Shown piece after piece: positions 44,037 to 62,839 of a stretch of 64,000 nt of DNA. The DNA lies in the IMG/VR virus record IMGVR_UViG_3300046616_000314, positions 434,001-498,000 of that record; one strand, given 5' to 3'. Positions within the stretch are counted from its first letter, which is position 1. Every line of letters begins with the position of its first letter. The translations under genes were made by a program, and so were the position numbers. The notes under the pieces were generated by a model. That model did not search any database. It was given only the letters and a program-made list of their open reading frames with translations, and was not told the DNA's origin.

Positions 44037-45938
44037 ATGCCATCAGTTGATAATAGTCGTATCAGTACACCTACGGGTGAAATCGATTACGCAGAAGATG
44101 ACGCAACCGCAAATGCGTCTACCACGTCCTCTTCTTCGCTAAATTCCTCTTCCACAACAAATCCTGATCAAACTATTTCTGGTTTGAACATCGGTGGTGG
44201 CTACGGTGTGTTCGCCGGAACCAACGGTCAATATGATGTTGTCATGGAATTCAAAACGCTGATTCCTGGCGTTGGTATTGAATTGATCCAAGATGCTTCA
44301 ACCATCACTATCAAAAATGTTGGTCAAAGCTCGGGTAACGGCACGATCATCGGTGACGGTTTTGACATCGATCTAGGTGATTCGAACACGGTCGTTTGGT
44401 CCGGTGGCGCCTTGCCATTTACAAATACGACGGTTGTTTCTGAAGCCATTGACGATCTCAATAAGCTTCTTGCCCTTCTGGTCCCTTCTGCCCCGCCTGC
44501 ATTCCCTAACGCAAATGCGCTGGTCATCACCAACACAACGGGTTCGACTCCGTACCTGTGTTCGGGTGTAACAAACAACTCGGGCACAACCGCTCCCACC
44601 GCTGGTACCGCGATCAACCGCATTACTACAACGGGCGCAACTTCCAACGTTTTCAATGACATGGGTCCTGGCAATTCGGGAACCATTCAATTGCGTGTCA
44701 ATGGCGCGGTCGCCAACTCGCATGTCATGACTGGTACAGGCGACAATGGCAACTACGGCGGTCTGTTGATTGCTGACCAAAAAGATTTCCCGGTTGCGAC
44801 CCCTGGTTTCTATAAATCAGTTGATGTCTCGGCTCTGCTGGCTGCTGCACCATTCGGTCTGAATCGTATTAGCTTAAACCATACTGGTGCTGGTGCAACT
44901 GCGGACGTGTTCTTTGTCCGCGATGCAATGACTAGCATGGCTTCGCTGAATTCTTCTACAGTTACCGAAGCTGCACTTGGTACTGTTGCGTACTCTTCAA
45001 GTGTTCCGCACTACAATACCGGTGCATCATTGACTGTTGGTACAACCGCTACGAACATTTCGGGCGATACATACTACGGTGGCACTGATCCTCTGGTTAT
45101 TTCTTCTCCGGTTATCGCTTCTCAATCGTTTGCTTATGGGACATTGGGTATCACGACACCGATTACTAAAGATTTGACTACTGCGACTATCAGCCCCGTA
45201 ACTGTCAACATCGACGGCACTGGTCACACTTCGGGTGTGATCCAGGGTTCGTTCAAGAACGTCAACGGCGCAAGCACACTGACGACACTATCACCGACCA
45301 CTGTCTTGATTAAGCGTGGCTCTGCTGGTTCGCGCATTGACGAAATGAGCGTCCCCGTTTCGGGTCTGGGTTCATCTCCGAACACCAACAACGCACTTCG
45401 CGTGGGTCAAGCCGCTGGTGACACACCGGCTGGCTCTCCTGCGGCTTGGGTTTCGTCAGCTTCGATTGCTACGCATGAAGCCGCCGTGGTCGCTGGTATT
45501 CTGAAGCATGACCAAACAAATTATAGTGTAAATTATTTGCCAGTTGGACCGGACCTGTCTTCAGGTCGTTCCGGTGCTCAATATGTCACGTTCTCGTTCA
45601 ATCGTGCAACCGTGTCTACCTTCAAGATCGCCATCACTGGAAATTATGCTGGCTGCTGGATCAAGCTTCCGGGTGTTTCGGATAACAACTCTATTTCACC
45701 GAATGCCGCGAACGGCTGGTGGAATATGTCTCAATCGTACATCGGCGCGGGCGTCCCCGGCGGTCCTGGCGACACAAACGCGGGTTGCGCGGTTGGTTCG
45801 GTCATGACCGGTTCGACGGGAACATATACCGTCACATTCGGTACACAAACTTCAACAAATGCAACGGGTAATCAGATTTTGGTTCGTATTCGCTTGAATG
45901 CTGGACAAACAATTTCGGCACTCGCGTTCACGAACTAA
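44037..45938 (+). CDS. Large virion fibre/appendage protein (module B)
   Basis: G/S/T/N-rich; about 520 C-terminal residues are paralogous to 61013-62839. Confidence 0.8.
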   Translation: MPSVDNSRISTPTGEIDYAEDDATANASTTSSSSLNSSSTTNPDQTISGLNIGGGYGVFAGTNGQYDVVMEFKTLIPGVGIELIQDASTITIKNVGQSSGNGTIIGDGFDIDLGDSNTVVWSGGALPFTNTTVVSEAIDDLNKLLALLVPSAPPAFPNANALVITNTTGSTPYLCSGVTNNSGTTAPTAGTAINRITTTGATSNVFNDMGPGNSGTIQLRVNGAVANSHVMTGTGDNGNYGGLLIADQKDFPVATPGFYKSVDVSALLAAAPFGLNRISLNHTGAGATADVFFVRDAMTSMASLNSSTVTEAALGTVAYSSSVPHYNTGASLTVGTTATNISGDTYYGGTDPLVISSPVIASQSFAYGTLGITTPITKDLTTATISPVTVNIDGTGHTSGVIQGSFKNVNGASTLTTLSPTTVLIKRGSAGSRIDEMSVPVSGLGSSPNTNNALRVGQAAGDTPAGSPAAWVSSASIATHEAAVVAGILKHDQTNYSVNYLPVGPDLSSGRSGAQYVTFSFNRATVSTFKIAITGNYAGCWIKLPGVSDNNSISPNAANGWWNMSQSYIGAGVPGGPGDTNAGCAVGSVMTGSTGTYTVTFGTQTSTNATGNQILVRIRLNAGQTISALAFTN

Positions 45939-45950
45939 GGGATTTGAAAG

Positions 45951-48182
45951 ATGGCTATTAGCGATTCAGAAAAGTTAGATACGCTCTGGAAAAAGATTAC
46001 GTACGGCAAATCCAAGACGGGTTCGGCAACAGCTAAGACAGGTTCGAACGAAGCGATTTCTTCGCCGTTGCCTGTTGTTCCCGATAACATTTGGGCACAA
46101 GCAAACGCAACAACCATTCCGTTGACCCCGCCGGTCTCCACCACGGGCTTTGTAAAGCGTTGGGTTGGTGTTGATCGCATTCGTATGACGAATGACGTTA
46201 CATCGTCGCCGAACCAAACTTGGCTGGCTACCCTAACCTACAACAGCGCGATCACCCGCCTGCGGGATTTCATTACGCCTGAATTTGGTCCGCAATATAT
46301 TGCTGCGGTCTACATTGGTGATCCGAATGGCGGTCCTGCTGCGCGTTTGTTCCCCGATACGACCAACGAAGAATGGGTTTTTGACTATTCGGCTGGCGTT
46401 CTGATTTTCTTGAACAACATCCCCGGATCGAAGACGGCTACCGTTGGCTCGGGCTCGGTTTCTATTGGTTCTAACGGAATCTATATTGAACTGTATCAAT
46501 ACATTGGTACAAAGGGTCTGGGTTCGGGCTCTGGTGGCGGCGGAAGCGGCGACTTCGTTGAACGAACTGGCGACACCATGTCGGGTACTCTGTCGTTTGG
46601 TGATTATGCCCCGAACGATGGTCAAACTCTTCTAATTCAAGAAGACGGCAACCTGCGCTCTGGTATGGGCGTCTCGGGTAGCGAAGTTCGTGTATTTGCT
46701 TCGCAAAACTCGACGCTATCCTTTGGACACGTTTCGTCCACCGATGGAATTGCTTATACCGAACGTGCGCGTTTTGATGAAAATGGTATGTTCACCGTTA
46801 CTGGTGCTGATGATGGTTATATCAGCACTGATGCTGGTAAGAGCCTAATTCTGGGTCATATTGACCAAGGTGTATTTGTTGAACGAGTTAAGATCAATGC
46901 CAACGGTGTTCTGACACGCGCTGGATACATGGTCTATGACACCAACAATTTCTCTCTGCAAAATACTACAGTAATTCCAGGCACTTACACTAGTGCAAAC
47001 ATTATCGTTGATGAGAAGGGTCGTATTCTTCAAGCGTCGAATGGTACGGGCTCTGGCGGCGGTGGTGGTGGAACCGTAACTAGCGTTGCTATCGCCAACG
47101 GCTCGGCTGCATTGTCCGTTTCGGGCGGTCCAATTACACTCGCGGGCACGATTACTGTTGATCTTACAAATACTGGTGTTACGGCTGGTCATTATACGAA
47201 CGCCGATGTTACGGTTGACCGTCAAGGACGTGTCACGGCTATTACCAATGGTACAGCAAGCGTCGGCGGTAATGGTACGGTTACGAGCGTTGGTTTATCG
47301 GGCTCGCCGGATGTATTGGTCTCGGGTGCTTCTCCGATCACAACTAGCGGCGCATTCGCTCTCAGTTTGTCCAACACGGGTGTTGCGCAAGGTACCTATA
47401 CCAAGCTCACCGTTGACACTAAAGGGCGTGTAACGGGTGCTGGAACGCTTGCAAACACCGACGTTACCGTGGCTCTGGGTTATAGCCCACTACGCATCAA
47501 CGAAACGATTACTCTATCTGGTGCAATCACTGGTTCGGGCGCAAATGCCATCGTCACTACACTGACAAACACCGTTGTCATCCCTGGTAGCTACACCAAT
47601 GCCAACATTACTGTTGGTCCCGATGGTCGTCTTACATCCGCATCGAACGGAACTGGTGGCGGTGGTGGTGGAGCCGTGGCTGTCAGCAAGAACGGTACGC
47701 AAGTTCTGGCGTCGGCTGCTAATCTGAACTTCACTGGTAACGGCGTTACCGTGACGGATGGTGGCTCGGGTACTGCAACAATCAATATTCCTGATTATCT
47801 GGAATATGTGCATTTCCAATATACAAGCGGTGGTTCGGGTACATTCTCTCAAGCGGATTGCGTTATCGCCAACTCTGCTGGTGTAGCTGTTTCATTCGTT
47901 GATACCCTCAACAGTATTGTTAAGTTTACATTTACTGGTCGTCCTTTCCCGCCCGCCTCGGTTGCTATCATGGGTCAATCTTATACTACTAACGAATTCC
48001 TGCACAAAAACTTGGGCGCGGAAATCGGAACACGTAAGATGCCCGGCGGCGGAACTGCTGCTGTCCCAACGGTCTTCGGTAATTTCACAGAAATGACTAT
48101 TCAGCTTCGTCAACAAGACACCGGGGCTTCTGGCGCCGCGCTTGGTCAACGTGCTCATGGTGCCATTATCTTTAAATTCTAA
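45951..48182 (+). CDS. Fibre protein (module C plus TxVxxGxYTxxxxxVDxxGR repeats)
   Basis: Four phage fibre repeats and poly-Gly hinges; N-terminus paralogous to 59912-60994. Confidence 0.8.
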   Translation: MAISDSEKLDTLWKKITYGKSKTGSATAKTGSNEAISSPLPVVPDNIWAQANATTIPLTPPVSTTGFVKRWVGVDRIRMTNDVTSSPNQTWLATLTYNSAITRLRDFITPEFGPQYIAAVYIGDPNGGPAARLFPDTTNEEWVFDYSAGVLIFLNNIPGSKTATVGSGSVSIGSNGIYIELYQYIGTKGLGSGSGGGGSGDFVERTGDTMSGTLSFGDYAPNDGQTLLIQEDGNLRSGMGVSGSEVRVFASQNSTLSFGHVSSTDGIAYTERARFDENGMFTVTGADDGYISTDAGKSLILGHIDQGVFVERVKINANGVLTRAGYMVYDTNNFSLQNTTVIPGTYTSANIIVDEKGRILQASNGTGSGGGGGGTVTSVAIANGSAALSVSGGPITLAGTITVDLTNTGVTAGHYTNADVTVDRQGRVTAITNGTASVGGNGTVTSVGLSGSPDVLVSGASPITTSGAFALSLSNTGVAQGTYTKLTVDTKGRVTGAGTLANTDVTVALGYSPLRINETITLSGAITGSGANAIVTTLTNTVVIPGSYTNANITVGPDGRLTSASNGTGGGGGGAVAVSKNGTQVLASAANLNFTGNGVTVTDGGSGTATINIPDYLEYVHFQYTSGGSGTFSQADCVIANSAGVAVSFVDTLNSIVKFTFTGRPFPPASVAIMGQSYTTNEFLHKNLGAEIGTRKMPGGGTAAVPTVFGNFTEMTIQLRQQDTGASGAALGQRAHGAIIFKF

Positions 48183-48191
48183 AGGATTACA

Positions 48192-50165
48192 ATGCGATAT
48201 ATTGATGTACCGGCAAAAGTAATTGAGTGCGTAGTATCATCCCAAACTGGTTTAGGGGCATGGCCCTATGACGATGGAACGGGTGATCCTTATTGGACAG
48301 GCGGATCAACACCGCGTGATTACCAATGGCGCATTACTATGTCGGTCACACCGCAAACGCATTCGAGTCCAAAGACACGTCAGCCTAAAATTTTTGATGG
48401 TATGGATATTTCCGTTGGTGATTATATCGCTGATCGCGAAGAAGGTGTTGCTCTAAAGATCATCAGTATTGACAGCAAGACTTCGACATCGGTTACGTGT
48501 GTTGTCGAAGATTTTCTTCGATACAACACTTATCGTTTCGTCGGTGGAACTGGCGTAGGTATTTTCAGTGTTCCAAACACATGCTTTGTGTTCTCGTTGA
48601 ATGAGCAATCGCTACCGGTTGTTGACCCGATTCCTTCTTCGGGAGCCGGATCGAATTTCTATGCAAATTTGATGTCGCGTTTCCAAAATATCGAAGAAAC
48701 AGAAAATTTTTTGCTGGATAAAGTAGCTCATGGATTTGTTGTCGATGATCTGATCTCGGCTGATCCGGCTACCAATTCGTTTGAAAAAACAGATTCGGCT
48801 CACCCGTATGTTGTTGGCTCGGTTTCGTACGTTGCTACGGGACCGGATCAATTCATGATCAATCCGATTCAAAAGATTAACAACTATCCCGATTTGATTG
48901 GTGATGTCGGTGATATAATTTACGCCGATCCAAACAATCCAGGGCAATACGCTTTGAATGGCGTTGTCCCAATCTTGATCAAACTGCGTAACAGCACACC
49001 TTCTCAATCGGTTGGACAAATCGCGGGAGGTACATCAGCTAGCGGGTCTATATTCAATGTAAACGAAGTTGCTTGTACTCTCGTGGGAACAACCGCTTTG
49101 GATTGTGCCAACGCGATCAATTTGACAACTAGCCAACATGGTATTGTTGCTTCGATGCAAGCGGCATCGTCATTTGCTCAAAGTGATGTTGGTCAGTGGG
49201 TTTATGGTGAGCCTGCGTTGATGACTCCGACTGCTGGACCATATGCTAATGCTACCATCAATGGCGTAAACGTTATTTTTTCTACAAATACAAATGGTCT
49301 GTCGCAATATAGTGCAGAATATTCGCTTGAAGAAGATATGGCTATCGATATCAATGCGGCAAACATTCCGAATATCGTGGCGACTACTGATAGTAACAAA
49401 CTGATTATTACGAACACTCAAGGTGGAAGCATCACCATCGTCAATGGCAATGCTGACATTTCTGGAAATTATTTCGCCGGTTCCATGTCTGGATCGGGTG
49501 TTCCTCTATTCACGGCTGCATCGAGCAATCAATATATTAAATTGGTTGCCCCGGATGCCCGCGCAATTAGTTTGTCGGATATCAGTGGCTCGGCTGTTTA
49601 TGATTTCGGTCTTGTTAGTGTTGAGAACGGCGTAAAGGCTGCTGGACTGTATATCGAACAAGGTATTCGTCAGGCTGCTACTTATGTTGTGCCTAACATC
49701 CCTGCCCGTGATGGTCTAACCGCCCTATTTGGCGACCAATGCTATGTTCAAGATGCCGGTAACGGTGAATGGGCATTCTATATCTACACTCTAGATAGCG
49801 AGTGGATTCAATTGGTCAACAAAGACGCCTCGGATACTGATGCTAAGACCATTGAAATCGAAGTCGATCATACAAGTGCTGTTAGTGGAGCCATCCACAC
49901 GATTTCTGATGGAAGCCGCGTGAGCTTTGTTACAGTTACCGTGACCGAAGCGTTTGATGATCCGGCTGCAACTATTACGGTTGGTGATACAGGAAATCAA
50001 TCTAGACTAATGTCAGATTACCAAAATGACATCACCGCGCTTGGTGATTACTCAACAACACCGTCATACGTGTATAATTTTGGGTCTGACACAACTGTAA
50101 GTTTTTATTTGGCGACCGGAAATTCTACCACAGGTCATGCCACGATTTCAATAACTTATAGCTAA
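48192..50165 (+). CDS. Virion structural protein (C-terminal module D)
   Basis: C-terminus paralogous to that of 59912-60994. Confidence 0.75.
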   Translation: MRYIDVPAKVIECVVSSQTGLGAWPYDDGTGDPYWTGGSTPRDYQWRITMSVTPQTHSSPKTRQPKIFDGMDISVGDYIADREEGVALKIISIDSKTSTSVTCVVEDFLRYNTYRFVGGTGVGIFSVPNTCFVFSLNEQSLPVVDPIPSSGAGSNFYANLMSRFQNIEETENFLLDKVAHGFVVDDLISADPATNSFEKTDSAHPYVVGSVSYVATGPDQFMINPIQKINNYPDLIGDVGDIIYADPNNPGQYALNGVVPILIKLRNSTPSQSVGQIAGGTSASGSIFNVNEVACTLVGTTALDCANAINLTTSQHGIVASMQAASSFAQSDVGQWVYGEPALMTPTAGPYANATINGVNVIFSTNTNGLSQYSAEYSLEEDMAIDINAANIPNIVATTDSNKLIITNTQGGSITIVNGNADISGNYFAGSMSGSGVPLFTAASSNQYIKLVAPDARAISLSDISGSAVYDFGLVSVENGVKAAGLYIEQGIRQAATYVVPNIPARDGLTALFGDQCYVQDAGNGEWAFYIYTLDSEWIQLVNKDASDTDAKTIEIEVDHTSAVSGAIHTISDGSRVSFVTVTVTEAFDDPAATITVGDTGNQSRLMSDYQNDITALGDYSTTPSYVYNFGSDTTVSFYLATGNSTTGHATISITYS

Positions 50166-50272
50166 ATTATCGATATCTCCGACTAAATATAGTTACCTGA
50201 CGCGGCAGAGTCTCGACTTGATATTTTGCTGTGAATATTCATCAAACGGGTACTTTTTTCTAGGAGAAATAC

Positions 50273-53122
50273 ATGGCTAATATCAAGAACTTCGGTATGA
50301 TTGGTGTTGGCTCGGACGTTCAGTTTGGTAAGGGCGGCGTAAAGCTCGTCTCGACCAACGGAACATTCGCTGCCAAGGACGCACAAGGTAATGCCTTTGT
50401 TCGTTTCCAAATCGCCGATGGTAACAGCGCATCCGACGCCGTTACATATTCGCAGTTGCAAGCGACTGCGAACGCCGTTGCTGATAGCGTAGCAAACGCT
50501 GTCGATGGCGTTCAAAATGAACTGGACCTGACTCAAGCGGGTGCTGGTCTGGATACCGATGGTTCGTATATCGCCCCAGTCGGTTCGTTCTATCTGAACA
50601 ACACCACAAGCCTCGCCAACGCAATTTTCGCGTTGGACACTCAAGCATTCAACGAAGCCAACGCCCGCGCGACTGCGGACGCTGAATTCGCTAACGCCCT
50701 GGCTGATGCGACCGCGAACGCGCTGTCGTTGCAAGCTGAAATCGACCAAATCGAAACTTCGGTTGGTCTGGGTCTTGATGGCACTCTGACTCTGGCTGCT
50801 GGCAACTATCTCGCCAACGCAGTTGATATCGTCAACGCAATCGAAACTTTGGATGGCGTTCTGGGTAACACCGCCACTGAAGCCGCTGCTGCCAACGCAA
50901 CTGCTACCGCTGCTAACGCCGCTGTCTCCGCTGTCGTTTCTGATCTGGCTAACACCAATGCAGAAGTTGCATCGGTTAATGCTACTGTTGAAGCTCTTTC
51001 GACCACTGTTACTGCTATTGCTGACAGCCTTGACGCTCTGAGCGACAACGTTGCAACCAACACTGCTGACATCGCAACCAACGCTGCTTCGATTGCAAAC
51101 ACCAATGCCGACGTTGCTAATACCAACGCTGACGTTGCTGCCCTGACCGCAAACGCTGTCCTGAAGGACGGTTCGGTTGCTTTCACTGGCGCAATGAGCA
51201 TGGGCAACAACGTCATTCACGACGTTGCTACTCCGGTTCTGGGTACTGATGCCGCTAACCGCGACTTCGTTATGCAAACAGTTGGCGAACTGGGTAACGC
51301 ATTCAACTACGTTGGATCGCTACCTGAACTGTTCGGTACCTTCCCGGTTTCGGGCGATGGTTTGACCGCTAACACCGCGTTCGATCTGGGTGAATTCCCG
51401 CCGGAAGGTCAAAATGCCGGTGACTACTATAAGGTTACTGCTGAAGGTTTCTATAAGGTCGGCGCCAATACTGCTGTCCTGTTTGAACCGAACGATGGTC
51501 TCGTATTCAACGCCATCGGTGATATCGATAAGATCGACAACCAATCGTCGGTCGTTCTGGGTACTCCTGGCGAAATCGACGTTACTGGTAGCGCATCGAC
51601 CGGCTTCACCGTTGGTATCGATGATAGCTATACACTAGCTCGCCAACAAGAAGTTTCGGATTCGGCTAACGTTGCTGCTACTGCTACTGCTGCGGTTGCT
51701 TCTGATCTGGCTAACACCAATGCCGACGTTGCTGCTGTTGTTTCCGATCTGGCAAACACCAACGCTGACGTTGCTGCGGTTGCTGCTGATCTGGTAAGCA
51801 CTAATGCAAACGTTGTCACTCTGACAGGTGTTGTTTCCGGTAACTCGGCAAACATCGCTCTGCTGCAAGGCGACATCGCTAACGCTGCTGGTGATTTGGC
51901 TGCTGAAACTGCTGCCCGTATCCAAGGCGACAGCGACAACGCTAACGCGATTGCTTCGACCAACGCCAACGTCACTTCGCTGGCTGGTAACGTTGCTACG
52001 ATCAGCAACAACGTTGATGCATTGATTCTTGAACTCAATACCGTCGAAACCGGCGCCGGTCTGGAAACAGACGGTTCGTATTCGGCTAATGCACTGTCGC
52101 ACTATCTGGCTAACGCTACAAGCCTGAAGACTGCTGACGAAGCTCTGGATACTGCGATCTATGATCTGGCTCAATCGCTGACCACTCTTTCGCAAGACGA
52201 AATCAAGACTGAAGACAACCTCAACTCGGTTAAGGTCGAAGCTGACAAAATCGGTTTCAATCTGAACGTTGGTGGTGTTAAGACTGAAGTTGGTTCGATC
52301 CTCGCTGATGCAAACACCAACACAACCGCTACCCTCGATCTGACCACTGCTGGTGAAGTTCACCTTGCGGCTGGCGGTGCAAGCACAGACGTTGATCTGC
52401 GCCTGTCGGGTAAGGGTGCTGGTCAAGTCATCATCGGTGAAACCGGAACTGGTTTCATTCAAGCTGACGCTGGTTATGACCTGAACGTTGCTGGTGGTGA
52501 TGGTGCTGCGCTGAACCTGATGGGTACAGCGGTCAACATTTCCTCGGGTGAAGGCGATGCGATCATGTCGTTCGTTGGCGTTGCCAACGCAACTGCTTCG
52601 TTCGTTGCCACAAACGGTACAACTGACGTTACTTTCGCCGCTACTGGCGCGGGTGCAAACATCGATATCGTTCTGGACCCGAAGGGTACAGGTACTATCA
52701 ATGCTTCGTCGTCGCGCATCGTCTCGGTTGCTAACGCTGTTAGCGCAAACGACGCTGTTAACAAGGGTCAACTGGATACCGCGATTGCTACCGCAACCGT
52801 TGGTGTTGTTAAGACCGTTGTTCTGTCGATTGTTGAAGTCGATGGTACATACGACATCGGTCAAATTGCCGGTACTGTTCTGCAAACTCGTACTTTGGTC
52901 ACAGGTGGCTTCGGTCCCGGTGCTGCCATCGTCATCGGTTCGACAGCTACTCCGAACGAACTAGCGTCGGCTGCTGATATTGATGAATCTGCTGCTGGCA
53001 TCTACGTTGTAGAAACAGTTAAGGACTACGGTTCGCCGACAATGCTGACTGTTACCGTCACTGGCTCTGCCATTGCCGGAACCGGCGCCGCGAAGGTAAT
53101 CGTTGAATATCTGTCTGCGTAA
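50273..53122 (+). CDS. Long coiled-coil fibre protein (module A, ANTNADVA heptads)
   Basis: Ala/Asn-rich heptads; DAVTYSQL, DAANRDFV and DAVNKGQL neck motifs; strong RBS, TAAATA and terminator. Confidence 0.85.
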   Translation: MANIKNFGMIGVGSDVQFGKGGVKLVSTNGTFAAKDAQGNAFVRFQIADGNSASDAVTYSQLQATANAVADSVANAVDGVQNELDLTQAGAGLDTDGSYIAPVGSFYLNNTTSLANAIFALDTQAFNEANARATADAEFANALADATANALSLQAEIDQIETSVGLGLDGTLTLAAGNYLANAVDIVNAIETLDGVLGNTATEAAAANATATAANAAVSAVVSDLANTNAEVASVNATVEALSTTVTAIADSLDALSDNVATNTADIATNAASIANTNADVANTNADVAALTANAVLKDGSVAFTGAMSMGNNVIHDVATPVLGTDAANRDFVMQTVGELGNAFNYVGSLPELFGTFPVSGDGLTANTAFDLGEFPPEGQNAGDYYKVTAEGFYKVGANTAVLFEPNDGLVFNAIGDIDKIDNQSSVVLGTPGEIDVTGSASTGFTVGIDDSYTLARQQEVSDSANVAATATAAVASDLANTNADVAAVVSDLANTNADVAAVAADLVSTNANVVTLTGVVSGNSANIALLQGDIANAAGDLAAETAARIQGDSDNANAIASTNANVTSLAGNVATISNNVDALILELNTVETGAGLETDGSYSANALSHYLANATSLKTADEALDTAIYDLAQSLTTLSQDEIKTEDNLNSVKVEADKIGFNLNVGGVKTEVGSILADANTNTTATLDLTTAGEVHLAAGGASTDVDLRLSGKGAGQVIIGETGTGFIQADAGYDLNVAGGDGAALNLMGTAVNISSGEGDAIMSFVGVANATASFVATNGTTDVTFAATGAGANIDIVLDPKGTGTINASSSRIVSVANAVSANDAVNKGQLDTAIATATVGVVKTVVLSIVEVDGTYDIGQIAGTVLQTRTLVTGGFGPGAAIVIGSTATPNELASAADIDESAAGIYVVETVKDYGSPTMLTVTVTGSAIAGTGAAKVIVEYLSA

Positions 53123-53143
53123 TTCTAGATAACTCAGACAACA

Positions 53144-53176
53144 GGGAAGGCGGGGGAAACCCCGCCTTTTCTATTT
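53144..53176 (+). terminator. Intrinsic terminator
   Basis: AAGGCGGGG-GAAA-CCCCGCCTTTT. Confidence 0.85.
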
Positions 53177-53210: not shown

Positions 53211-53840
53211 ATGTCTACACCCTCAAACATTCAATTTTATGTAAAATTAATTGTCTCCAAGGAACTAGATAAAAGTTCTGCGAAAGAGTGGTTTGCGTGC
53301 GTTCGTGATTTGGGTCCTAATGGTGTTTTGTCCACCATTCAAACTCCTGATGACAAGGGAACGCTACGTAGTGTGTCCATGGTATGTCGTGCAGTTGGTG
53401 AAAAATTCGAATATATTGTTCCGTTGACACGCGATCTGATCGAACGAGAAGTTGAACCCATCATTCAATGTTTTGTCGCGGAACACCCCGAAGTCGATTT
53501 CGATGTTGAAACCTCGGTGGCAGTCATTCGCGGCTTCGAAGATTCCGCAAAAATTAAAGATTCAAAATACGTTGAGCTTTGCACCTTGTGGGCTAAGCAG
53601 CGTCACGACGAATGGTATAAAGATCGCACCGACAATGGTTGGTCGTATGGTACCTCGGTTAGCCTGAAAGATAAGAAGCATCCCTTGCTTCGTCCCTGGC
53701 ATGAACTTTCTGATCAGCATCGCAAGATCGATCTGGACCAACCGAAGCAGATGATGAAGATGCTAGCCGATAGCGGTTACGCCGTTCTCGACAAGGACGA
53801 ATTTGATAGCATGGTCCGACTTCTTAAGGGTGGATTGTAA
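53211..53840 (+). CDS. RyR-domain protein
   Basis: AKQRHDEW...GWSYG......KKHPLLRPWHELS...RKID is the ryanodine-receptor repeat signature. Confidence 0.85.
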   Translation: MSTPSNIQFYVKLIVSKELDKSSAKEWFACVRDLGPNGVLSTIQTPDDKGTLRSVSMVCRAVGEKFEYIVPLTRDLIEREVEPIIQCFVAEHPEVDFDVETSVAVIRGFEDSAKIKDSKYVELCTLWAKQRHDEWYKDRTDNGWSYGTSVSLKDKKHPLLRPWHELSDQHRKIDLDQPKQMMKMLADSGYAVLDKDEFDSMVRLLKGGL

Positions 53841-53883
53841 TAAAATATTGAAATGGGGTTAACGTAACCGGTATAATCTGGTT

Positions 53884-55242
53884 ATGAATTCTGTTTCAAT
53901 TATCAAAGACCTTTCCGCTACCACGTCGCGCATCGACAAAGAGCAAATCCTAATCAATGCCTTCATGACAGGGCAACGAGAATTTTTTAAGGGCGCCCAA
54001 CTCGCCTATGATCCGCTCATCACTTTCGGTGTTAAGAAAGTAGCGTTGATCGAAGAAGCCGATGACGAACCCGGTGATTATACGTTCGCAGACTTTCTTG
54101 CCCTCGCGAACGATCTACGCACTCGGAAGCTAACCGGACATGCCGCCCGTGATGCTATCAACGCCGCTGCAATGCGTTGCCATGTCGAAACATGGAATAT
54201 GTTCTATCGCCGTATTCTTCTAAAAGATTTCAAGGCTGGTGTTGAACAGTCCACCATCAATAAAATTTTAAAGAAGCTGGCATCGGAAGATGACGCTAAG
54301 GATTTCATCGTTCCTGAATTTTCGTGCCAACTAGCCGAAGATGGAATGAAGCCAGTTCACCACAAGAAGGTGAGCGGTCGCAAGATGCTAGACATCAAGT
54401 TGGATGGTATGCGTCTTCTTACGGTTTTGGACAAAGAACAAGGTACCGTAAACCAGTACACGCGCACGGGTAAGCTCAACGAAAACTTCAGTGAGATTCG
54501 TGAAGGTTTGTTGAAACTTCTACCTGAACTTAAGACATCGTTGGTGCTCGACGGCGAAGTGATTTCAACAAGCTTCCAAGATTTGATGACACAGGTCAAC
54601 CGCCGTGAAGGTGTTGACACGAAAGCTGCGCGCCTAGCACTTTTTGACATCATTCCTCTTGATGCATTTCGTGCCGGAAAATGGAATGTAGAACAAGTTC
54701 TTCGCCAAGAAATTCTTGCCGAAATGGAAACGAGTGGGCTTTTCAAGAAGTATTGTAACGGATTGGTCTACGTAATTCCCAAAGTAACGGTGGACCTAGA
54801 TACGGACGCTGGACAAGAAACCTTCAAGGAATTCAACAAACAAGCAATCGAGTCTGACTATGAAGGTATCATGGTCAAGGACCCGAAGGCTCCATATATT
54901 TGTAAGCGTAACGTCGGATGGCTTAAGATCAAGCCCTTCATCGAAGTTAGCCTTGAGGTAATTGGTATTGAAGAGGGTGAACCCGATGGAAAGTATAAGG
55001 GCAAGCTTGGTGCGCTGAAGTGTCAGGGCGAAGACGACGGGAAAGAGATTGAGGTTTTCGTTGGTAGTGGTATAAGTGATATTCAACGTGACCTATGGTG
55101 GAAAAATCCTGCCTTGGTTATGGGTATGATTGTTGAAGTCCGCGCCGATTGCTTTACCTTAGAGGCAGGCGGCACGGTATATTCCTTGCGGTTCCCTCGT
55201 TTGAAGGGCTTCCGTGGCACGGTTCCAGGCGAGAAATTATGA
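53884..55242 (+). CDS. ATP-dependent DNA ligase
   Basis: KLDGMR, VLDGE, LFDII, EGIMVK, WLKIK, SLRFPR. Confidence 0.96.
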   Translation: MNSVSIIKDLSATTSRIDKEQILINAFMTGQREFFKGAQLAYDPLITFGVKKVALIEEADDEPGDYTFADFLALANDLRTRKLTGHAARDAINAAAMRCHVETWNMFYRRILLKDFKAGVEQSTINKILKKLASEDDAKDFIVPEFSCQLAEDGMKPVHHKKVSGRKMLDIKLDGMRLLTVLDKEQGTVNQYTRTGKLNENFSEIREGLLKLLPELKTSLVLDGEVISTSFQDLMTQVNRREGVDTKAARLALFDIIPLDAFRAGKWNVEQVLRQEILAEMETSGLFKKYCNGLVYVIPKVTVDLDTDAGQETFKEFNKQAIESDYEGIMVKDPKAPYICKRNVGWLKIKPFIEVSLEVIGIEEGEPDGKYKGKLGALKCQGEDDGKEIEVFVGSGISDIQRDLWWKNPALVMGMIVEVRADCFTLEAGGTVYSLRFPRLKGFRGTVPGEKL

Positions 55243-55637
55243 AATTTGCGGTACGTGCTTCGGGTCTAGAACAAATCTCCTTTAAAGCCGGATGGTATGG
55301 TGATTTTCATGATGATCTAGGGCACGTCGAGTTTGATGAGCATTTTTCAATTTACGAAGGGAAACTAGTGTTCCCTGAACCATGGCTAGAGACCGCATAT
55401 ATTATTTCTGCGGAATGGTATTCAGGTATCGAAGCCGACGCTCTTTCTTTCATCAATCGGCTTCATGCACACCGGCACGAATTTTCAAAATGGACGAGTG
55501 CTCGGTTTTGGGATTTCTCCAAAAAGGCGGGTGCTACTGGTCACAATTTGAATCTTGGGATGTTTTTTACGAATGAGGATGACGCCGTTCTTGCTCTATT
55601 CATCCTCTCTACCTGTCTCCAATTTCCTCGTAAATAA
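55239..55637 (+). CDS. Small hypothetical protein (FxDxxDA family)
   Basis: ATGA overlap with the ligase; MFFTNEDDAVLAL. Confidence 0.65.
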   Translation: MKFAVRASGLEQISFKAGWYGDFHDDLGHVEFDEHFSIYEGKLVFPEPWLETAYIISAEWYSGIEADALSFINRLHAHRHEFSKWTSARFWDFSKKAGATGHNLNLGMFFTNEDDAVLALFILSTCLQFPRK

Positions 55638-55732
55638 AAATTCAGTAAGGGTATTGACTAGGCATAAAAATCGAGTATCCTATGCAAATCAGATACGGGA
55701 TTAGCCCGTTAATTTTGAATGGGAATTGATTT

Positions 55733-56323
55733 ATGACCGAAGCTACTTACTCCCCCCGCGAAGAATTTTTTGGTGTTCGCGAAGATGAGCGCGTTGGCGT
55801 TTTCATCGACGGTCCCAATTTCTTCTCGGCTGCGAAGGCTATCGGGCTCCGCGTGGACTACGCCAAGCTGATCGAATATCTGGACGAAATGTCGAACTTC
55901 GTCCGCGCCAACTACTACACCGCGCTCAGCACCGATCAAGAAACGCACGATCCGATTCGTCCGATGATCGACTTCCTCGAATACAACGGCTACAATCTCG
56001 TCACCAAGCCGGTGAAGACCTTCGAAGACTCGGAAGGTCGTCGTCGCTTCAAGGGCAACATGGACATCGAGATCGCCATCGACGTTCTGGAAGCCGCCGA
56101 ACACCTGAACCACGTCATCATGTTCACGGGCGACGGCGATTTCCGCGCCCTGGTGGATCGCGTGCAACGCAAGGGCGTCCGCGTCACCGTGGTTTCGACC
56201 ATGAACAAGGACGGTACCGGTGGTCCGATGATCGCTGACGAACTGCGTCGCAAGGCTGACAGCTTCGTTGAACTGGCGACCCTGAAGCCGCTGCTGACCA
56301 AGGCTGAACGCACCGACCGATAA
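55733..56323 (+). CDS. NYN-domain (LabA/DUF88) putative RNase, alphaproteobacterial type
   Basis: FIDGPN, KGNMDIEIAID, FTGDGDF, VTVVST, MIADELRRKAD. Confidence 0.92.
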   Translation: MTEATYSPREEFFGVREDERVGVFIDGPNFFSAAKAIGLRVDYAKLIEYLDEMSNFVRANYYTALSTDQETHDPIRPMIDFLEYNGYNLVTKPVKTFEDSEGRRRFKGNMDIEIAIDVLEAAEHLNHVIMFTGDGDFRALVDRVQRKGVRVTVVSTMNKDGTGGPMIADELRRKADSFVELATLKPLLTKAERTDR

Positions 56324-56346
56324 TCGGCGCCAAAACCTAGAATGAG

Positions 56347-56376: not shown

Positions 56377-56377
56377 G

Positions 56378-56977: not shown

Positions 56978-57039
56978 ACACTTATTTAGTGCGTAGTTAA
57001 TTACTTTGTGATATAAGCAAAATATTAATGGAGGTTGGT

Positions 57040-59155: not shown

Positions 59156-59179
59156 AGCTATATTTAGCCGTATAAGGAT

Positions 59180-59207
59180 TTGACCATTTACGAAAATCTG
59201 GTATAAT
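59180..59207 (+). promoter_or_regulatory. Sigma70-like early promoter (representative)
   Basis: TTGACC-N16-TATAAT; similar TTGACA/T-N16-TAnnnT at 31772, 40533 and 55654 (+) and 14702 and 38889 (-). Confidence 0.7.
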
Positions 59208-59237
59208 GCCTAGTCATTAATCCTTTTGGAGATATAA

Positions 59238-59834: not shown

Positions 59835-59855
59835 ATCCAAACGGATTTAGGAACG

Positions 59856-59892
59856 AAAAAAGCCCCGGCAGTTTTGCCGGGGCTTTTCTTTT
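59856..59892. terminator. Bidirectional terminator
   Basis: AAAAGCCCCGGCA-GTTT-TGCCGGGGCTTTT. Confidence 0.85.
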
Positions 59893-59911
59893 ACGCTTTA
59901 CTTACGCGAAC

Positions 59912-60994
59912 TTATGCGTAAGTGATGATGATTGTTGCGTTACCAAGAGTAGCAGTTCCGGTGACATAGATCGAAATCGCTGTCTCGGAACCGGCTGGAT
60001 ATTGGTAGATCGGTGTAGTTACGTAAGCACCTTCCGATTGCAAATCGTTTTGATCATCGCCCATTAGACGAAGATTGTCACTAGCGTCACCGACGCTAAT
60101 TGCCATGTCGCCATCAAAACCATCGGTGACTTCAACGCTAACTTCAACGACACGAGCACCATTGCCAACGTTGCCGATGGAGATTGTACCGGTCGAAGCT
60201 GCGTCAATTTCAACCTTTGTAGTCAGGCTGTCCGAACGAGCCGAATCTTGGGTTGCAGTTAGAACCCATGCACCTGTCCACAGGTATTCAGCCCATTCAC
60301 CAGCCGCCGCATCAGTGGGGTTGCCACTTGCGTCGATTACGTGAACGACTTGACCAGTGAACGGTGTCAGTGCGTCGCGCGCAGCAATATTGGCAACAAC
60401 GGTGGTACCCGAAGTGATGCCGCTAAAGCCCTTGCTACCAACGTAGCGATAACCCTCAATGTAGATGCCGTTCGAAGCAACCGAAACGGTTGTAGCCGTA
60501 CCGATTGTTGCCGTGCGGCTTGCCGGGATGGTGTTCGGGAAAGTCAGAACACCAGCAACGTAGTCGAAAATCCATTCTTCGTTAGTTGTATCCGGTAGGA
60601 TACGTGCAGCAGGACCGCCGTTCGGATCACCGATATATACCTTAACGGCATAACCAGCACCGAAAGCCGAAGGAACGAAGTCACCGGTACGCGATGCAGT
60701 TGTTCCAAAAGTCGAAGTTGTGAACCAAGTGAGGTTTGACGGAGCGGTCGGGTCATTCGTACAACGATAGCGATTAGCTCCGGTGTAAACGCCGACGTTA
60801 GCAGTTGTCGAAACCGGCGGGGTTTCTGGAATGCTAGTGCTGTCGGTGTTTGCCCAAATGCTTGACGCATAAACAGTTGTCGGCGAAGCGACGGTTTCGT
60901 TAGACGCAAGCTTTGTGCCCGAACCAGCGGTCTTAGAAGTACCGAAGTTCTTTTTCCACAAAAGGTCTAGTTTTTCTGTATCTGAAATAGCCAT
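59912..60994 (-). CDS. Virion fibre-associated protein (modules C+D)
   Basis: N-terminus like the 45951 product, C-terminus like the 48192 product. Confidence 0.8.
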   Translation of the reverse strand: MAISDTEKLDLLWKKNFGTSKTAGSGTKLASNETVASPTTVYASSIWANTDSTSIPETPPVSTTANVGVYTGANRYRCTNDPTAPSNLTWFTTSTFGTTASRTGDFVPSAFGAGYAVKVYIGDPNGGPAARILPDTTNEEWIFDYVAGVLTFPNTIPASRTATIGTATTVSVASNGIYIEGYRYVGSKGFSGITSGTTVVANIAARDALTPFTGQVVHVIDASGNPTDAAAGEWAEYLWTGAWVLTATQDSARSDSLTTKVEIDAASTGTISIGNVGNGARVVEVSVEVTDGFDGDMAISVGDASDNLRLMGDDQNDLQSEGAYVTTPIYQYPAGSETAISIYVTGTATLGNATIIITYA

Positions 60995-61012
60995 AATAAA
61001 TCTATACCTTTC

Positions 61013-62839
61013 TTAGTTTGTGAAGCTTAGAGCACTGATCGATTGACCAGCATTCAGGCGAATGCGAACCAAGATTTGATTGCCTGTAGCGTTAGTGGAC
61101 GACTGAGTACCGAAAGTAATCGAGAAGGTACCCGAAGCACCCGACATCGCAGAACCTTGAGCACAACCGGCTAGAGTATCACCAGATTTACCGGGGACGC
61201 CAGCACCGTCGTACAGTTGGAAAGCATTCCACCAGCCGTTAGCAGCGTTCGGAGAGATTGTGCCATTGTCGGAGACGCCCGGTAGACCGATCCAGCAACC
61301 CGCGTAAGTGCCGGTGACTACGATCTTGAATGCCGATAGAGCCGAACGATTGAACGAGAAGGTTACGTATTGCGCACCAGTACGACCCGAAGACAGGTTC
61401 GGACCAGCAGGCAGATAACCCGACGAATAGTTCGTTTGGTCATGCTTCAAAGTACCGCCAACAACGGTTGCATCGTAGGTTTGGATTGCAGCAGTAGCAT
61501 CCCAAGCCGATTGAGTTTGAACCGGGGTGTCGCCACCAGCAGCCAGACCCATACGAATTGCGTTATTTGTGTTCGGAGAAGAACCCAGACCGGTGACTGT
61601 AACGCTCAGTTCATCAATACGACCAGCAGCAGTACCGCGCTTAACGAGAACAACGCCAGTAGCGGTTGTGCCTGTCGAGCCATTGACGTTGCGACCGGTA
61701 AGAGTAACGGTACCCATATTGTGGATATTTGTGCCGTTAACGCTTAGTGATTGTTGAGAAATATTTGTAGCAGTAGTTGTGTTCGCATTGATCGGAGTAG
61801 AAATACCCAAAGTGGCGTATGTCAGAGTTTGCGAAGTTAGAATGCTGTTAGAGGCTGAAATAACCAGCGGGTCGGTGCCGCCGTAGTATGTTTGACCAGC
61901 GAGGTTGCTGATAGAACCGTTGACGTTCAGAGACGCGCCGCTGTTGTAGTGAGGAACGCTGGACGAATACGCCAGAGTACCCGCAACACCTTCAACGACG
62001 TTGGCGGTGACAGCCGGAACGGCGGTCAAATGGTCACGAACAAAATAAATTTCAGAAGTTTGACCGGCGCCTGTGTGGTTCAGTCGGAATTTGTTGACGC
62101 CAAGCGGTGCAGCCGCCAGGGTAACAGTAGTATCAATGGACTTCCAAAAACCAGCAGTCGAAAGCGGATAATCTTTCTGATCGGCAAGGACCAGACCGGA
62201 ATATGTACCGCCGTCGCCTGTACCTGTCAGAGCCTTAGAGCCAAGGACCGAACCGTTCAGCAAGAGTTGCATGGTACCCGAATTGCCCGGTCCCATGTCT
62301 TGGAAGGTGTTGGAAGAAACGCCAGCCGCCGTGATACGCGAAACAGCGTTGGTAGGAACGAGAGTAGAAGTACCGCTGTTATCAACGACACCGTTAGCCA
62401 GGACCGGAGTAGTACCGGCGGTGTTGGCAACGGTCAGGGCGTTGCCGTTCGGGAACGCGGGAGGCGCAGCCGGTGTGAGCAAAGCCAAGATTTCGTTCAA
62501 GCCATCAATGGCATCCGAAACCTTTGTTGTTTCTGTGATAGTGATTGCACCCGGCGAGAACGATCCGTCGCCCTCAGTCGCGGCATTACCCATGACAAGG
62601 TGAAAGCCATCAACTGGACCGGCGTTTGCGACGGCGTTGCTGATGGACGTGTTAAGTTGGTTCAGGGTCACAACGTCGTTGTTTCCAACGCCGGGAGCCG
62701 CACGAACAACCGCCAACGAACTATCGTCAGCGGTACGAGCCTCGATTGTTTCCGCATTTTTCTTCAGGCGCGGACCTGACTTACCTAGTTGTACGTTGCT
62801 GCCAACGCCAACCAGACCGAAATTTTTAATATCAGCCAT
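61013..62839 (-). CDS. Virion fibre/appendage protein (modules A+B)
   Basis: N-terminus like the 50273 product, remainder like the 44037 product. Confidence 0.8.
   Translation of the reverse strand: MADIKNFGLVGVGSNVQLGKSGPRLKKNAETIEARTADDSSLAVVRAAPGVGNNDVVTLNQLNTSISNAVANAGPVDGFHLVMGNAATEGDGSFSPGAITITETTKVSDAIDGLNEILALLTPAAPPAFPNGNALTVANTAGTTPVLANGVVDNSGTSTLVPTNAVSRITAAGVSSNTFQDMGPGNSGTMQLLLNGSVLGSKALTGTGDGGTYSGLVLADQKDYPLSTAGFWKSIDTTVTLAAAPLGVNKFRLNHTGAGQTSEIYFVRDHLTAVPAVTANVVEGVAGTLAYSSSVPHYNSGASLNVNGSISNLAGQTYYGGTDPLVISASNSILTSQTLTYATLGISTPINANTTTATNISQQSLSVNGTNIHNMGTVTLTGRNVNGSTGTTATGVVLVKRGTAAGRIDELSVTVTGLGSSPNTNNAIRMGLAAGGDTPVQTQSAWDATAAIQTYDATVVGGTLKHDQTNYSSGYLPAGPNLSSGRTGAQYVTFSFNRSALSAFKIVVTGTYAGCWIGLPGVSDNGTISPNAANGWWNAFQLYDGAGVPGKSGDTLAGCAQGSAMSGASGTFSITFGTQSSTNATGNQILVRIRLNAGQSISALSFTN

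What the first reader, a model, noticed from the sequence alone, without database searches (positions are those of the whole stretch)
44037..62839. Six fibre-like genes built from four shared modules; the inverted two-gene operon is a compact chimera of the four-gene operon
Seen: the plus operon encodes P1 (44037, x+B), P2 (45951, C+repeats), P3 (48192, y+D) and P4 (50273, A+coiled coil+D-like end). The minus operon encodes P6 (62839, A+B) and P5 (60994, C+D). Module A: MANIKNFGMIGVGSDVQFGKGG vs MADIKNFGLVGVGSNVQLGKSG. Module B: about 520 aa, both ending STNATGNQILVRIRLNAGQxISALxFTN. Module C: MAISDSEKLDTLWKK vs MAISDTEKLDLLWKK, about 190 aa. Module D: VVPNIPARDGL...RLMSDYQND vs VVANIAARDAL...RLMGDDQND. 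The B-then-C gene adjacency is kept in both operons. Inference: the modules are docking adaptors (for example B binds C, D binds A) that daisy-chain subunits into long or branched appendages. P6 and P5 alone could then form a repeating (A-B)(C-D) polymer, such as the hair-like fibres or head filaments seen on some large phages.
Basis: partly seen in the sequence, partly recalled or inferred. Interest (0 to 1): 0.7.

Follow-up and report, generated by a model that had tools for sequence, protein, structure and literature searches.

The report
Modular, serially docked phage fibre proteins
Six late genes of a 561-kb jumbo phage encode fibre proteins built from shuffled modules, and one joint (the end of module B to the start of module C) is kept across hundreds of phages, so these are probably multi-piece virion fibres with exchangeable tips rather than a new kind of polymer.

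Summary
All six ORFs and the four shared modules are at the stated coordinates, with E-values from 1e-15 to 0.

The window lies in a 561,116-bp Atu_ph07/Phosso-like jumbo myophage.

- **Module B** is a rod of Ig-like beta-sandwiches (model pLDDT 88).
- **Module C** is an N-terminal adaptor found on many fibre proteins.
- **Module D** is a C-terminal jelly-roll.
- **Module A** is a short N-terminal root, followed by predicted helices.

The main result is comparative. In 79 IMG/VR loci, 84 of 86 C modules start a gene that lies -1 to 27 nt behind a gene ending in B. Several phages insert C+B "link" proteins, giving chains B|C-B|C-B|C.

Atu_ph07 homologues (y1+B, C+B, C+other) are in its virion proteome, and so is the PA5oct homologue of P3.

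"B docks C" is therefore well supported, though only indirectly. "D docks A" and the (A-B)(C-D) polymer have no support. The "compact chimera" reading runs the wrong way: A+B|C+D is the widespread, probably ancestral pair, and both operons are conserved in related contigs of 415 and 517 kb.

The site on the virion (tail or capsid whiskers) is unresolved. I file it as a new variant of a known kind.

The parts
43543..43555 (+). T4-type late-promoter-like motif (TATAAATA at 43545) about 25 nt before the 43577 gene
   Evidence: One search shows the sequence. In one search, 13 of 19 scored genome occurrences (20 found) of TATAAATA lie 10-70 nt upstream of an ORF of at least 100 aa, against 1.1 +/- 1.1 for random positions.
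43577..43978 (+). 133-aa gene heading the plus operon; small virion-structural-like protein
   Evidence: phrog_14467 'virion structural protein' E 8e-11 and phrog_13657. A homologue lies directly upstream of the P1-type gene in L016 and near B genes in L044, L057 and L061.
44037..45938 (+). P1: low-complexity N-terminus x (aa 1-105, 44037-44351) plus module B (aa 106-633, 44352-45935)
   Evidence: phrog_8578 E 2e-197. 56-60% identical to phiCbK-like gp073 homologues.
45951..48182 (+). P2: module C (aa 1-195, 45951-46535) plus a shaft with four tail-fibre motif repeats and poly-Gly linkers
   Evidence: phrog_9417 E 1e-78 and tail-fibre PHROGs 38058 and 7389. Repeats are visible.
48192..50165 (+). 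P3: module y (aa 1-480) plus module D (aa 481-657, 49632-50162)
   Evidence: Full-length homologues of very uniform length (650-680 aa) occur in many jumbo contigs. PA5oct gp181 is annotated 'structural protein, ESI-MS/MS'. The first 160 aa (y1) are the N-terminus of the B proteins Phosso gp123 and Atu_ph07 gp326.
50273..53122 (+). P4: module A (aa 1-120) plus an Ala/Asn-rich repeat stalk plus a D-like end (aa 838-946, 52784-53110)
   Evidence: The family has lengths from about 180 to about 3600 aa (full-length relatives mostly 700-3600) with many repeated stretches.
53149..53174 (+). Intrinsic terminator after P4 (GC hairpin plus T run)
   Evidence: Read directly from the sequence. The consensus scan missed it.
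59856..59885 (-). Intrinsic terminator after P5
   Evidence: Read directly from the sequence.
59912..60994 (-). P5: module C (aa 1-195, 60410-60994) plus module D jelly-roll (aa 196-360, 59915-60409)
   Evidence: AF2 model pLDDT 85. D (aa 254-360) matches jelly-roll cement proteins at Z 9-10. More than 80 full-length homologues. SCTP-2 gp231 is 41% identical over the full length.
61013..62839 (-). P6: module A (aa 1-75, 62615-62839), helical neck, and module B (aa 77-608, 61016-62611)
   Evidence: AF2 model pLDDT 88, pTM 0.71, with tandem beta-sandwiches from about aa 127 to 608. SCTP-2 gp230 is 35% identical over the full length. Many 600-615-aa homologues.

Best explanation
The six genes encode late-expressed, modular virion fibre proteins of a 561-kb jumbo myophage related to Atu_ph07 and Phosso.

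Each protein has the plan N-terminal docking module, then shaft, then C-terminal end module.

**Two-piece fibres.** Two pairs are read as two-piece fibres.
- A root protein (P6 = A + helical neck + B; P1 = x + neck + B) ends in a conserved beta-sandwich domain.
- That domain docks the N-terminal C module of the protein encoded immediately downstream (P5 = C + D jelly-roll tip; P2 = C + tail-fibre-repeat shaft).

**One-piece fibres.** P3 (y + D) and P4 (A + Ala/Asn-rich repeat stalk + D-like end) reuse the same root (A) or the same tip (D).

**What sharing a module means.**
- Proteins with A would use the same acceptor site on the virion.
- C always plugs into the end of B.
- Proteins with D would present the same distal domain.

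In other phages, C+B proteins extend the chain by one or two links.

**Shown:**
- the paralogy between the six genes;
- the predicted folds of B, C and D (P5 and P6 models only; P1-P4 were not modelled);
- the B-then-C gene coupling;
- virion presence of homologues;
- a late-promoter motif before the plus operon.

**Inferred:**
- physical B:C binding;
- root-to-tip polarity;
- D as the distal (ligand-binding) end;
- oligomeric state.

**Unresolved:** whether the roots sit on the tail or baseplate, or on the capsid as 'whiskers'.
For: **Paralogy and module boundaries.**

**Genome type.** DNA polymerase is 54% identical to Phosso and 52% to Atu_ph07. The genome is 561,116 bp.

**Folds.**
- B is tandem Ig-like beta-sandwiches.
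- D is a jelly-roll.
- C recurs as the N-terminal domain of proteins named tail fibre, or carrying PTL_trimer or collagen domains (TM 0.63-0.72).
- P2 carries tail-fibre motif repeats and tail-fibre PHROG hits.
- The P4 family is a variable-length repeat fibre.

**The B-to-C joint.**
- 84 of 86 C modules in 79 IMG/VR loci are directly preceded by a gene ending in B. The stop-to-ATG gap is -1 to 27 nt, median 5.
- C always starts at residue 1, and B always runs to the last residues of its protein.
- C+B links occur in CcrColossus gp088, Phosso gp124, Atu_ph07 gp325, and loci L013, L019, L044, L057, L077. L063 has two links.
- The most conserved parts are the last ~150 aa of B (71-84% column conservation; 75-88% between P1 and P6) and the first 40 aa of C (71-78%). 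That stretch of C is low-confidence in the monomer model.

**Virion presence.**
- Atu_ph07 gp324, gp325 and gp326 were detected by ESI-MS/MS with 6, 13 and 9 peptides (Supplementary Table S5 of PMC6102473). Their module content is shown.
- PA5oct gp181, the P3 homologue, is annotated as detected by ESI-MS/MS.

**Late expression.** TATAAATA lies before the 43577 gene, and the motif is strongly positioned upstream of ORFs genome-wide.

**Variable tips.** The parts after C vary: D, tail-fibre repeats, collagen, or only about 40 aa. This is what exchangeable distal tips would look like.
Against: - No direct evidence of B:C contact. The single 1:1 P6+P5 complex prediction scored 0.00, which the tool says is no evidence either way.
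- The oligomeric state is unknown. B modelled confidently as a monomer, which fits Hoc-like monomeric Ig rods as well as trimers.
- D's best structural matches are capsid cement proteins, not fibre tips. If D binds the capsid, the polarity could be reversed.
- Tight gene adjacency could reflect co-regulation of a cassette without direct binding.
- Two loci (L034, L035) have a C gene that is not preceded by B.
- phiCbK virion mass spectrometry did not report gp73 or gp74, though it found only eight proteins.
Confidence: 0.6

Rival explanations
1. Capsid-anchored whiskers. The proteins decorate the head rather than the tail. D, or part of y, acts as a cement-like capsid-binding domain. Alternatively the N-terminal roots bind capsid sites. 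Either way the Ig-like B rods and repeat stalks project as the hair-like, capsid-associated fibres seen on Atu_ph07.
For: - D (P5 254-360) best matches trimeric capsid cement proteins: KHP30 Z 10.2 (21% id), Pam1 Z 9.5, GP4 Z 9.3.
- Language-model features of P3 1-490 point to the Phage_cement and lambda gpD families (scores about 0.8, leads only).
- The P3 profile weakly hits a minor capsid protein (9gay_C, E 0.079).
- In phiCbK-like phages the B and C genes lie just after the capsid genes and before the head-filament candidate gp076.
- Tandem Ig-like rods resemble T4 Hoc (my own knowledge).
Against: - The jelly-roll fold also matches fibre tips and baseplate parts: 7-7-1 tail fibre Z 7.2, R4C baseplate Z 8.0.
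- phiCbK gp074 has C but no D.
- In PA5oct, Atu_ph07 and Phosso the homologues sit beside genes annotated as tail or tail fibre.
- The feature and profile hits are below significance.
Confidence: 0.25
2. B binds C and D binds A, so P6 (A-B) and P5 (C-D) alternate into an open-ended polymer (a long hair or head filament), and the other proteins branch from it.
For: - The B-to-C coupling is supported.
- A+B|C+D is a self-contained two-gene cassette that often sits alone among non-structural genes.
- C+B link proteins show that chain extension is used in this family.
Against: - No evidence for D:A.
- D-bearing P3 homologues occur in PA5oct-like phages where no A or B was found by tblastn.
- A occurs on three proteins with different C-termini in this genome.
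- Where chains are extended, evolution used C+B links rather than D:A contacts.
- The complex prediction gave no answer.
Confidence: 0.07
3. A co-inherited cassette without direct binding. B-ending and C-starting proteins are independent fibres or decoration proteins kept adjacent by co-regulation, and the shared modules merely reflect duplication and recombination among fibre genes.
For: - Mosaic domain shuffling among phage fibre genes is common (my own knowledge).
- No structural evidence of contact.
Against: - The adjacency survives down to about 30% identity and across sipho- and myophage backgrounds.
- B is always C-terminal and C always N-terminal.
- Gaps are -1 to 27 nt.
- C+B fusions occur repeatedly in register.
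- Conservation peaks at exactly the two apposed ends.
Confidence: 0.08

Closest known systems
phiCbK gp073/gp074 family (PHROGs 8578 and 9417) of Caulobacter and Brevundimonas giant siphophages, with Atu_ph07 gp324-326, Phosso gp123-125 and SCTP-2 gp230/231
   Same: True homologues. B is 52-61% identical to the phiCbK-like proteins and 29-35% to Atu_ph07, Phosso and SCTP-2. The gene order is the same, B then C. SCTP-2 has the same A+B|C+D pair.
   Different: None of these has an assigned function. phiCbK-like C proteins lack D. Atu_ph07 and Phosso use a y1 root and a C+B link. Here there are two parallel pairs plus two single-piece relatives.
T4 long tail fibre (gp34-gp35-gp36-gp37): serial end-to-end assembly with gene order matching assembly order (my own knowledge)
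   Same: Consecutive genes would encode consecutive fibre segments, joined C-terminus to N-terminus. The distal piece is variable.
   Different: No sequence similarity of these six proteins to gp34-37. B is an Ig-like rod rather than the T4 fibre fold. A separate T4-like distal fibre gene exists at 4039-6015.
Branched receptor-binding complexes with N-terminal anchor modules: CBA120 TSP1-4, G7C gp63.1/gp66, and the hyperbranched fibres of RaK2 and phiKp24 (PMC9700779; my own knowledge)
   Same: Several fibre proteins in one jumbo phage share N-terminal docking modules and differ in their distal parts. This phage belongs to the wider Rak2-like group.
   Different: No depolymerase beta-helix. 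Only a weak match to the CBA120 TSP4 N-terminal region (E 5e-4, TM 0.12). The docking modules A and C are different families.
Jelly-roll capsid cement proteins (KHP30, KHP40, Pam1, GP4) and T4 Hoc
   Same: D shares the cement jelly-roll fold (Z 9-10, about 20% identity). B is a string of Ig-like domains, as in Hoc.
   Different: D is a C-terminal domain of 360-950-aa proteins, not a standalone protein of about 130 aa. There is no evidence of capsid binding and no sequence similarity to Hoc.

Membership tests
phiCbK gp073-like proteins (phrog_8578, module B) | Full-length profile match to the family | tested here: met
   P1 E 1.6e-197 and P6 E 8.6e-208. 52-61% identity to phiCbK-like proteins.
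phiCbK gp074-like proteins (phrog_9417, module C) | Profile match at the N-terminus, and position directly downstream of a B-ending gene | tested here: met
   P2 E 1e-78 and P5 E 6e-78. Adjacency holds in the window (gaps 12 and 18 nt) and for 84 of 86 C modules elsewhere.
T4-type long tail fibre (gp34-37) | Sequence or profile homology to gp34, gp35, gp36 or gp37 | tested here: not met
   No Pfam hit. PHROG hits are to unknown-function families, plus generic tail-fibre families for the P2 shaft.
T4-type long tail fibre (gp34-37) | Serial C-to-N joining of the products of consecutive genes | tested here: inconclusive
   The gene-order pattern fits. Physical joining is not shown (one search gave no answer).
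Branched tailspike/fibre complexes with T4 gp10-like anchor domains (CBA120, G7C, RaK2 type) | gp10-like N-terminal XD domains | tested here: inconclusive
   Only a weak Foldseek match of the P5 model to CBA120 TSP4 1-335 (E 5e-4, TM 0.12). No Pfam T4_gp9_10 hit.
Branched tailspike/fibre complexes with T4 gp10-like anchor domains (CBA120, G7C, RaK2 type) | Enzymatic beta-helix depolymerase domains | tested here: inconclusive
   Not seen in the P5 or P6 models, and no Pfam hit in any of the six. P1-P4 were not modelled.
Jelly-roll capsid cement proteins | Jelly-roll fold matching solved cement proteins | tested here: met
   P5 254-360 against 7dn2_1 Z 10.2, 7eel_H Z 9.5, 8h89_J Z 9.3.
Jelly-roll capsid cement proteins | Standalone small protein bound at capsid three-fold sites | tested here: not met
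   The standalone-protein part is not met: D is the C-terminal domain of proteins of 360, 657 and 949 aa. Capsid binding itself cannot be tested with these tools.
T4 Hoc-like Ig-domain head decoration | Tandem Ig-like domains | tested here: met
   P6 model residues 127-608. The matches are only generic Ig or Fab-like, Z below 7.
T4 Hoc-like Ig-domain head decoration | Capsid-binding domain, with location at hexamer centres | not testable with these tools
   Needs virion imaging.

The most novel reading that the evidence does not exclude
The B:C joint is a general 'root / extender / cap' construction kit. In it, C+B proteins are chain extenders that build hair-like virion filaments of set length. 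These would include the capsid-associated whiskers of Atu_ph07-type jumbo phages and possibly a so far unassigned head- or neck-associated appendage of phiCbK-like flagellotropic phages. The kit would have moved between giant siphophages and jumbo myophages.
Probability: 0.15. Interest if true: 0.75.

Novelty: new variant of a known kind. Interest (0 to 1): 0.55.

Why it matters
All four modules belong to families with no assigned function. They have no Pfam match and no solved structure. Yet the C module alone marks more than 560 loci in IMG/VR.

A conserved joint with exchangeable tips and optional extender links would help in three ways:
- It would give a rule for reading fibre architecture from gene order in jumbo phages, where most structural genes are unannotated.
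- It would name candidate proteins for the unexplained whiskers of Atu_ph07-type phages.
- It would flag gp073 and gp074 as testable appendage genes in the phiCbK model system.

Module B is 52-61% identical between 66%-GC (my own recollection, not measured here) Caulobacter siphophages and this 48%-GC jumbo myophage, but only about 30% identical to the jumbo phage's own relatives. That points to exchange of adsorption hardware across very different phage types.

Tried and rejected
- Megablast of the plus operon against phage genomes found nothing.
- tblastn of P4 against phage genomes found nothing. P4 relatives appeared only in the exhaustive HMMER search.
- Pfam gave nothing above threshold for any of the six proteins.
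- Sequence and profile searches of the PDB gave nothing significant. The best was a minor capsid protein at E 0.079.
- The complex prediction of full-length P6 + P5 (1:1) scored 0.00, which the tool calls 'no answer'. I do not use it either way.
- The consensus promoter and terminator scan was no better than shuffles, and it missed the two obvious terminators. I read the intergenic DNA directly instead.
- Self-BLAST found no internal repeats in P2. The short motif repeats are seen only by eye.
- The 43577 gene is not homologous to phiCbK gp072, which holds the same position.
- I rejected 'phiCbK-like phage' as the identity of the window. The polymerase, a T4-like fibre gene and the 561-kb genome size say jumbo myophage.
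- I rejected the 'chimera' direction of evolution. Caveat: the B tree is a quick search, several forks are below 95% support, and the outgroups are long branches.


Full report
**1. Observation**

BLASTP among them confirms the four shared modules:
- B: P1 77-633 vs P6 49-608, 57.6% over 568 aa, E = 0.
- C: P2 vs P5, first 196 aa, 54.8%, E 4e-68.
- D: P3 481-657 vs P5 172-360, 41%, E 2e-33.
- A plus neck: P4 1-283 vs P6 1-312, 25.6%, E 1e-15.
- D-like end: P4 838-946 vs P5 244-359, 30.5%, E 8e-7.

The quoted peptides are present.

P2's 'repeats' are four short tail-fibre-type motifs with poly-Gly linkers. P4's stalk is Ala/Asn-rich with 21- and 42-nt periodicity.

Both gene groups end in clear hairpin-plus-T terminators, at 53149-53174 and at 59856-59885 on the minus strand.

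A conserved 133-aa gene (43577-43978) precedes P1. It is itself preceded by TATAAATA at 43545. In this genome 13 of 19 scored copies of that octamer (20 found) lie 10-70 nt upstream of an ORF of at least 100 aa, against 1.1 +/- 1.1 for random positions. It therefore behaves as a T4-type late promoter. Weaker variants lie before P1, P4 and P6.

**2. What genome this is**

The window is bases 434001-498000 of a single 561,116-bp contig.

Its family-B DNA polymerase is closest to Sinorhizobium phage Phosso (54%) and Agrobacterium phage Atu_ph07 (52%). The window also holds a T4-like distal tail-fibre gene, a ClpB-like ATPase, thymidylate synthase and a DNA ligase.

It is a Rak2/Atu_ph07-type jumbo myophage, not a phiCbK-like phage.

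A scan of the whole genome found no further B, C or D copies. It did find a seventh gene with module A at genome 533979-535316, beside genes with tail-fibre-like C-terminal domains.

**3. Folds**

No Pfam family and no solved structure matches by sequence. All four modules fall in PHROGs of unknown function.

AlphaFold2 models built with family alignments are confident: P5 pLDDT 85, and P6 pLDDT 88 with pTM 0.71.

- **B** is a run of Ig-like beta-sandwich domains from about residue 127 to 608. Its matches are only generic (Fab, adhesin, Big and fn3 arrays).
- **A** is a short beta-hairpin region followed by helices. Language-model look-alikes are N-termini of tail and head fibre proteins; these are leads only.
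- **C** recurs in the ESM Atlas as the N-terminal domain of proteins named tail fibre, or carrying PTL_trimer or collagen domains (TM 0.63-0.72).
- **D** (P5 254-360) is a jelly-roll. Its best matches are trimeric capsid cement proteins: KHP30 Z 10.2, Pam1 Z 9.5, GP4 Z 9.3, at about 20% identity. It also resembles fibre tips and baseplate parts at Z 7-8. BFVD shows many standalone proteins of 130-150 aa with this fold.

The first 45 residues of C are the most conserved part of the P5 family, yet they are of low confidence in the monomer model. That is typical of a segment that folds on a partner.

**4. The B-to-C joint**

This is the main finding.

In phiCbK, gp073 ends in B and gp074 starts with C. 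The same order holds in SCTP-2 (gp230 = A+B, gp231 = C+D), Phosso, Atu_ph07 and CcrColossus.

A pattern scan of IMG/VR with the P5 family found at least 562 loci with a C module.

In the best 79 loci:
- 84 of 86 C modules begin a gene that lies -1 to 27 nt (median 5) behind the stop codon of a gene ending in B.
- B always runs to the C-terminus of its protein, and C always starts at residue 1.
- The only exceptions are two near-identical loci, L034 and L035.

Several phages carry C+B proteins between a root+B gene and a final C gene. These are CcrColossus gp087|gp088|gp089, Atu_ph07 gp326|gp325|gp324, Phosso gp123|gp124|gp125, and loci L013, L019, L044, L057 and L077. L063, from a 543-kb contig, has two such links in a row.

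Conservation peaks at the two ends that would meet. The last ~150 aa of B show 71-84% column conservation, and 75-88% identity between P1 and P6. The first 40 aa of C show 71-78%.

The simplest reading is that the last domain of B docks the C module of the next protein, and that C+B proteins extend the chain.

This is inference. The one complex prediction allowed (full-length P6 + P5, 1:1) returned 'no answer'.

**5. Virion presence**

Its virion ESI-MS/MS table lists gp324, gp325 and gp326 with 6, 13 and 9 peptides. I show these to be C+other, C+B and y1+B.

The full-length P3 homologue of PA5oct (gp181) is annotated 'structural protein, ESI-MS/MS'. It sits beside genes annotated tail protein and minor tail protein.

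phiCbK virion mass spectrometry did not list gp73 or gp74, but it found only eight proteins.

**6. Direction of evolution**

Full-length P6-type (about 600-615 aa) and P5-type (about 340-365 aa) proteins are abundant on contigs of 80-580 kb, and they occur in the distant SCTP-2.

The four-gene operon (x+B | C+shaft | y+D | A+stalk) is also conserved, together with the pair, in contigs of 517 and 415 kb (L015 and L016 alongside L009 and L010). The overall synteny recurs in a 578-kb relative.

In a quick maximum-likelihood tree of 128 B modules, rooted on SCTP-2, Phosso and Atu_ph07:
- A+B sequences form the basal grade.
- P1-type sequences are nested within them.
- All phiCbK-like B modules form one nested clade (SH-aLRT 88).

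Several forks are weak and the outgroups are long branches, so this is only indicative.

The two-gene operon is therefore not a chimera derived from the four-gene one. If anything, the P1/P2 pair is the derived copy with replaced ends.

B is 52-61% identical to the Caulobacter and Brevundimonas siphophage proteins but only 29-35% to Atu_ph07, Phosso and SCTP-2. This suggests old exchange between very different phage types.

**7. The D:A idea and the polymer**

Nothing supports D binding A.
- P3-type proteins (y+D) occur in PA5oct-like phages, where tblastn finds neither B nor A.
- A is carried by three proteins with unrelated C-termini.
- Where chains are lengthened, C+B links are used.

The idea is not excluded, but it is unlikely.

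**8. Where on the virion**

This is unresolved.

Points towards the tail:
- neighbours annotated as tail or fibre genes in PA5oct, Atu_ph07 and Phosso;
- tail-fibre motifs in P2;
- D-like domains at solved fibre tips.

Points towards the capsid:
- D's best matches are cement proteins;
- weak cement and decoration leads for P3;
- the capsid-associated whiskers of Atu_ph07;
- the position of the phiCbK genes, between the capsid genes and the head-filament candidate gp076.

In other jumbo contigs the pair sits alone among non-structural genes.

**9. Comparison with known systems and verdict**

The logic resembles two known systems:
- the T4 long tail fibre, where consecutive genes are joined end to end;
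- the anchor-module systems of CBA120, G7C and RaK2/phiKp24.

There is no sequence membership in those families and no depolymerase domain.

The proteins are members of the uncharacterised phiCbK gp073/gp074 families.

I file this as a new variant of a known kind: a widespread, undescribed fibre joint with optional extender links. Interest is moderate (0.55).

Noticed in passing
genome 533979-535316 (+), outside the window; L004:7989-9317: A seventh gene carries module A (61% identical to P6 aa 1-70). It has a different C-terminus (phrog_16122 'virion structural protein'). It is preceded by TATAAATA and followed by genes with tail-fibre-like C-terminal domains (phrog_1141).
   Followed up: partly
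genome 268031-278368 (-), outside the window: A giant 3445-aa ORF has weak repeated similarity (27-29% over about 170-200 aa) to the lectin-like region of phiCbK gp076, the proposed head-filament protein.
   Followed up: no
window 43545-43552 and genome-wide: TATAAATA is not over-represented overall (20 copies against about 23 expected). However, 13 of 19 scored copies lie 10-70 nt upstream of long ORFs, as expected of a T4-type late promoter in this jumbo phage.
   Followed up: partly
window 4039-6015 (-) and 6012-8048 (-): A T4-like long tail fibre distal-subunit gene (many tail-fibre PHROGs, E down to 7e-29) sits next to a 678-aa ORF with no PHROG hit. This is a separate fibre system from the six genes studied.
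   Followed up: no
window 12001-14000 and 36001-38000: Two GC-rich islands (0.56 against about 0.48). The first holds long overlapping ORFs on both strands (11851-13167 minus, 11866-13170 plus) with no PHROG hit for the minus-strand one (the plus-strand ORF was not scanned). The second lies within the ClpB-like ATPase gene (35499-37826).
   Followed up: no
window 53149-53174 and 59856-59885: Two textbook intrinsic terminators (GC hairpin plus T run) follow P4 and P5. The consensus terminator scan did not list either.
   Followed up: yes
window 53211-56323: Between the two fibre operons lie a 209-aa ORF whose homologue in a relative carries a RyR domain (53211-53840), an ATP-dependent DNA ligase (53884-55242) and an ORF whose homologue carries an NYN domain (55733-56323). 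The same block separates the fibre genes in a 578-kb relative (L006).
   Followed up: partly
window 9225-9301: A single tRNA-Arg(TCT) gene is the only tRNA in the 64-kb window.
   Followed up: no
L063 (IMG/VR contig of 543,035 bp), 1924-8743: This is the longest chain seen: four consecutive genes reading B | C-B | C-B | C.
   Followed up: partly
Leptospira LE1-like phage records (for example KF114879.1 75778-75954): Module A (about 60 aa, about 42% identity, E 7e-7) also occurs at the start of hypothetical proteins of Leptospira LE1-like phages. This is far outside the jumbo-phage group.
   Followed up: no
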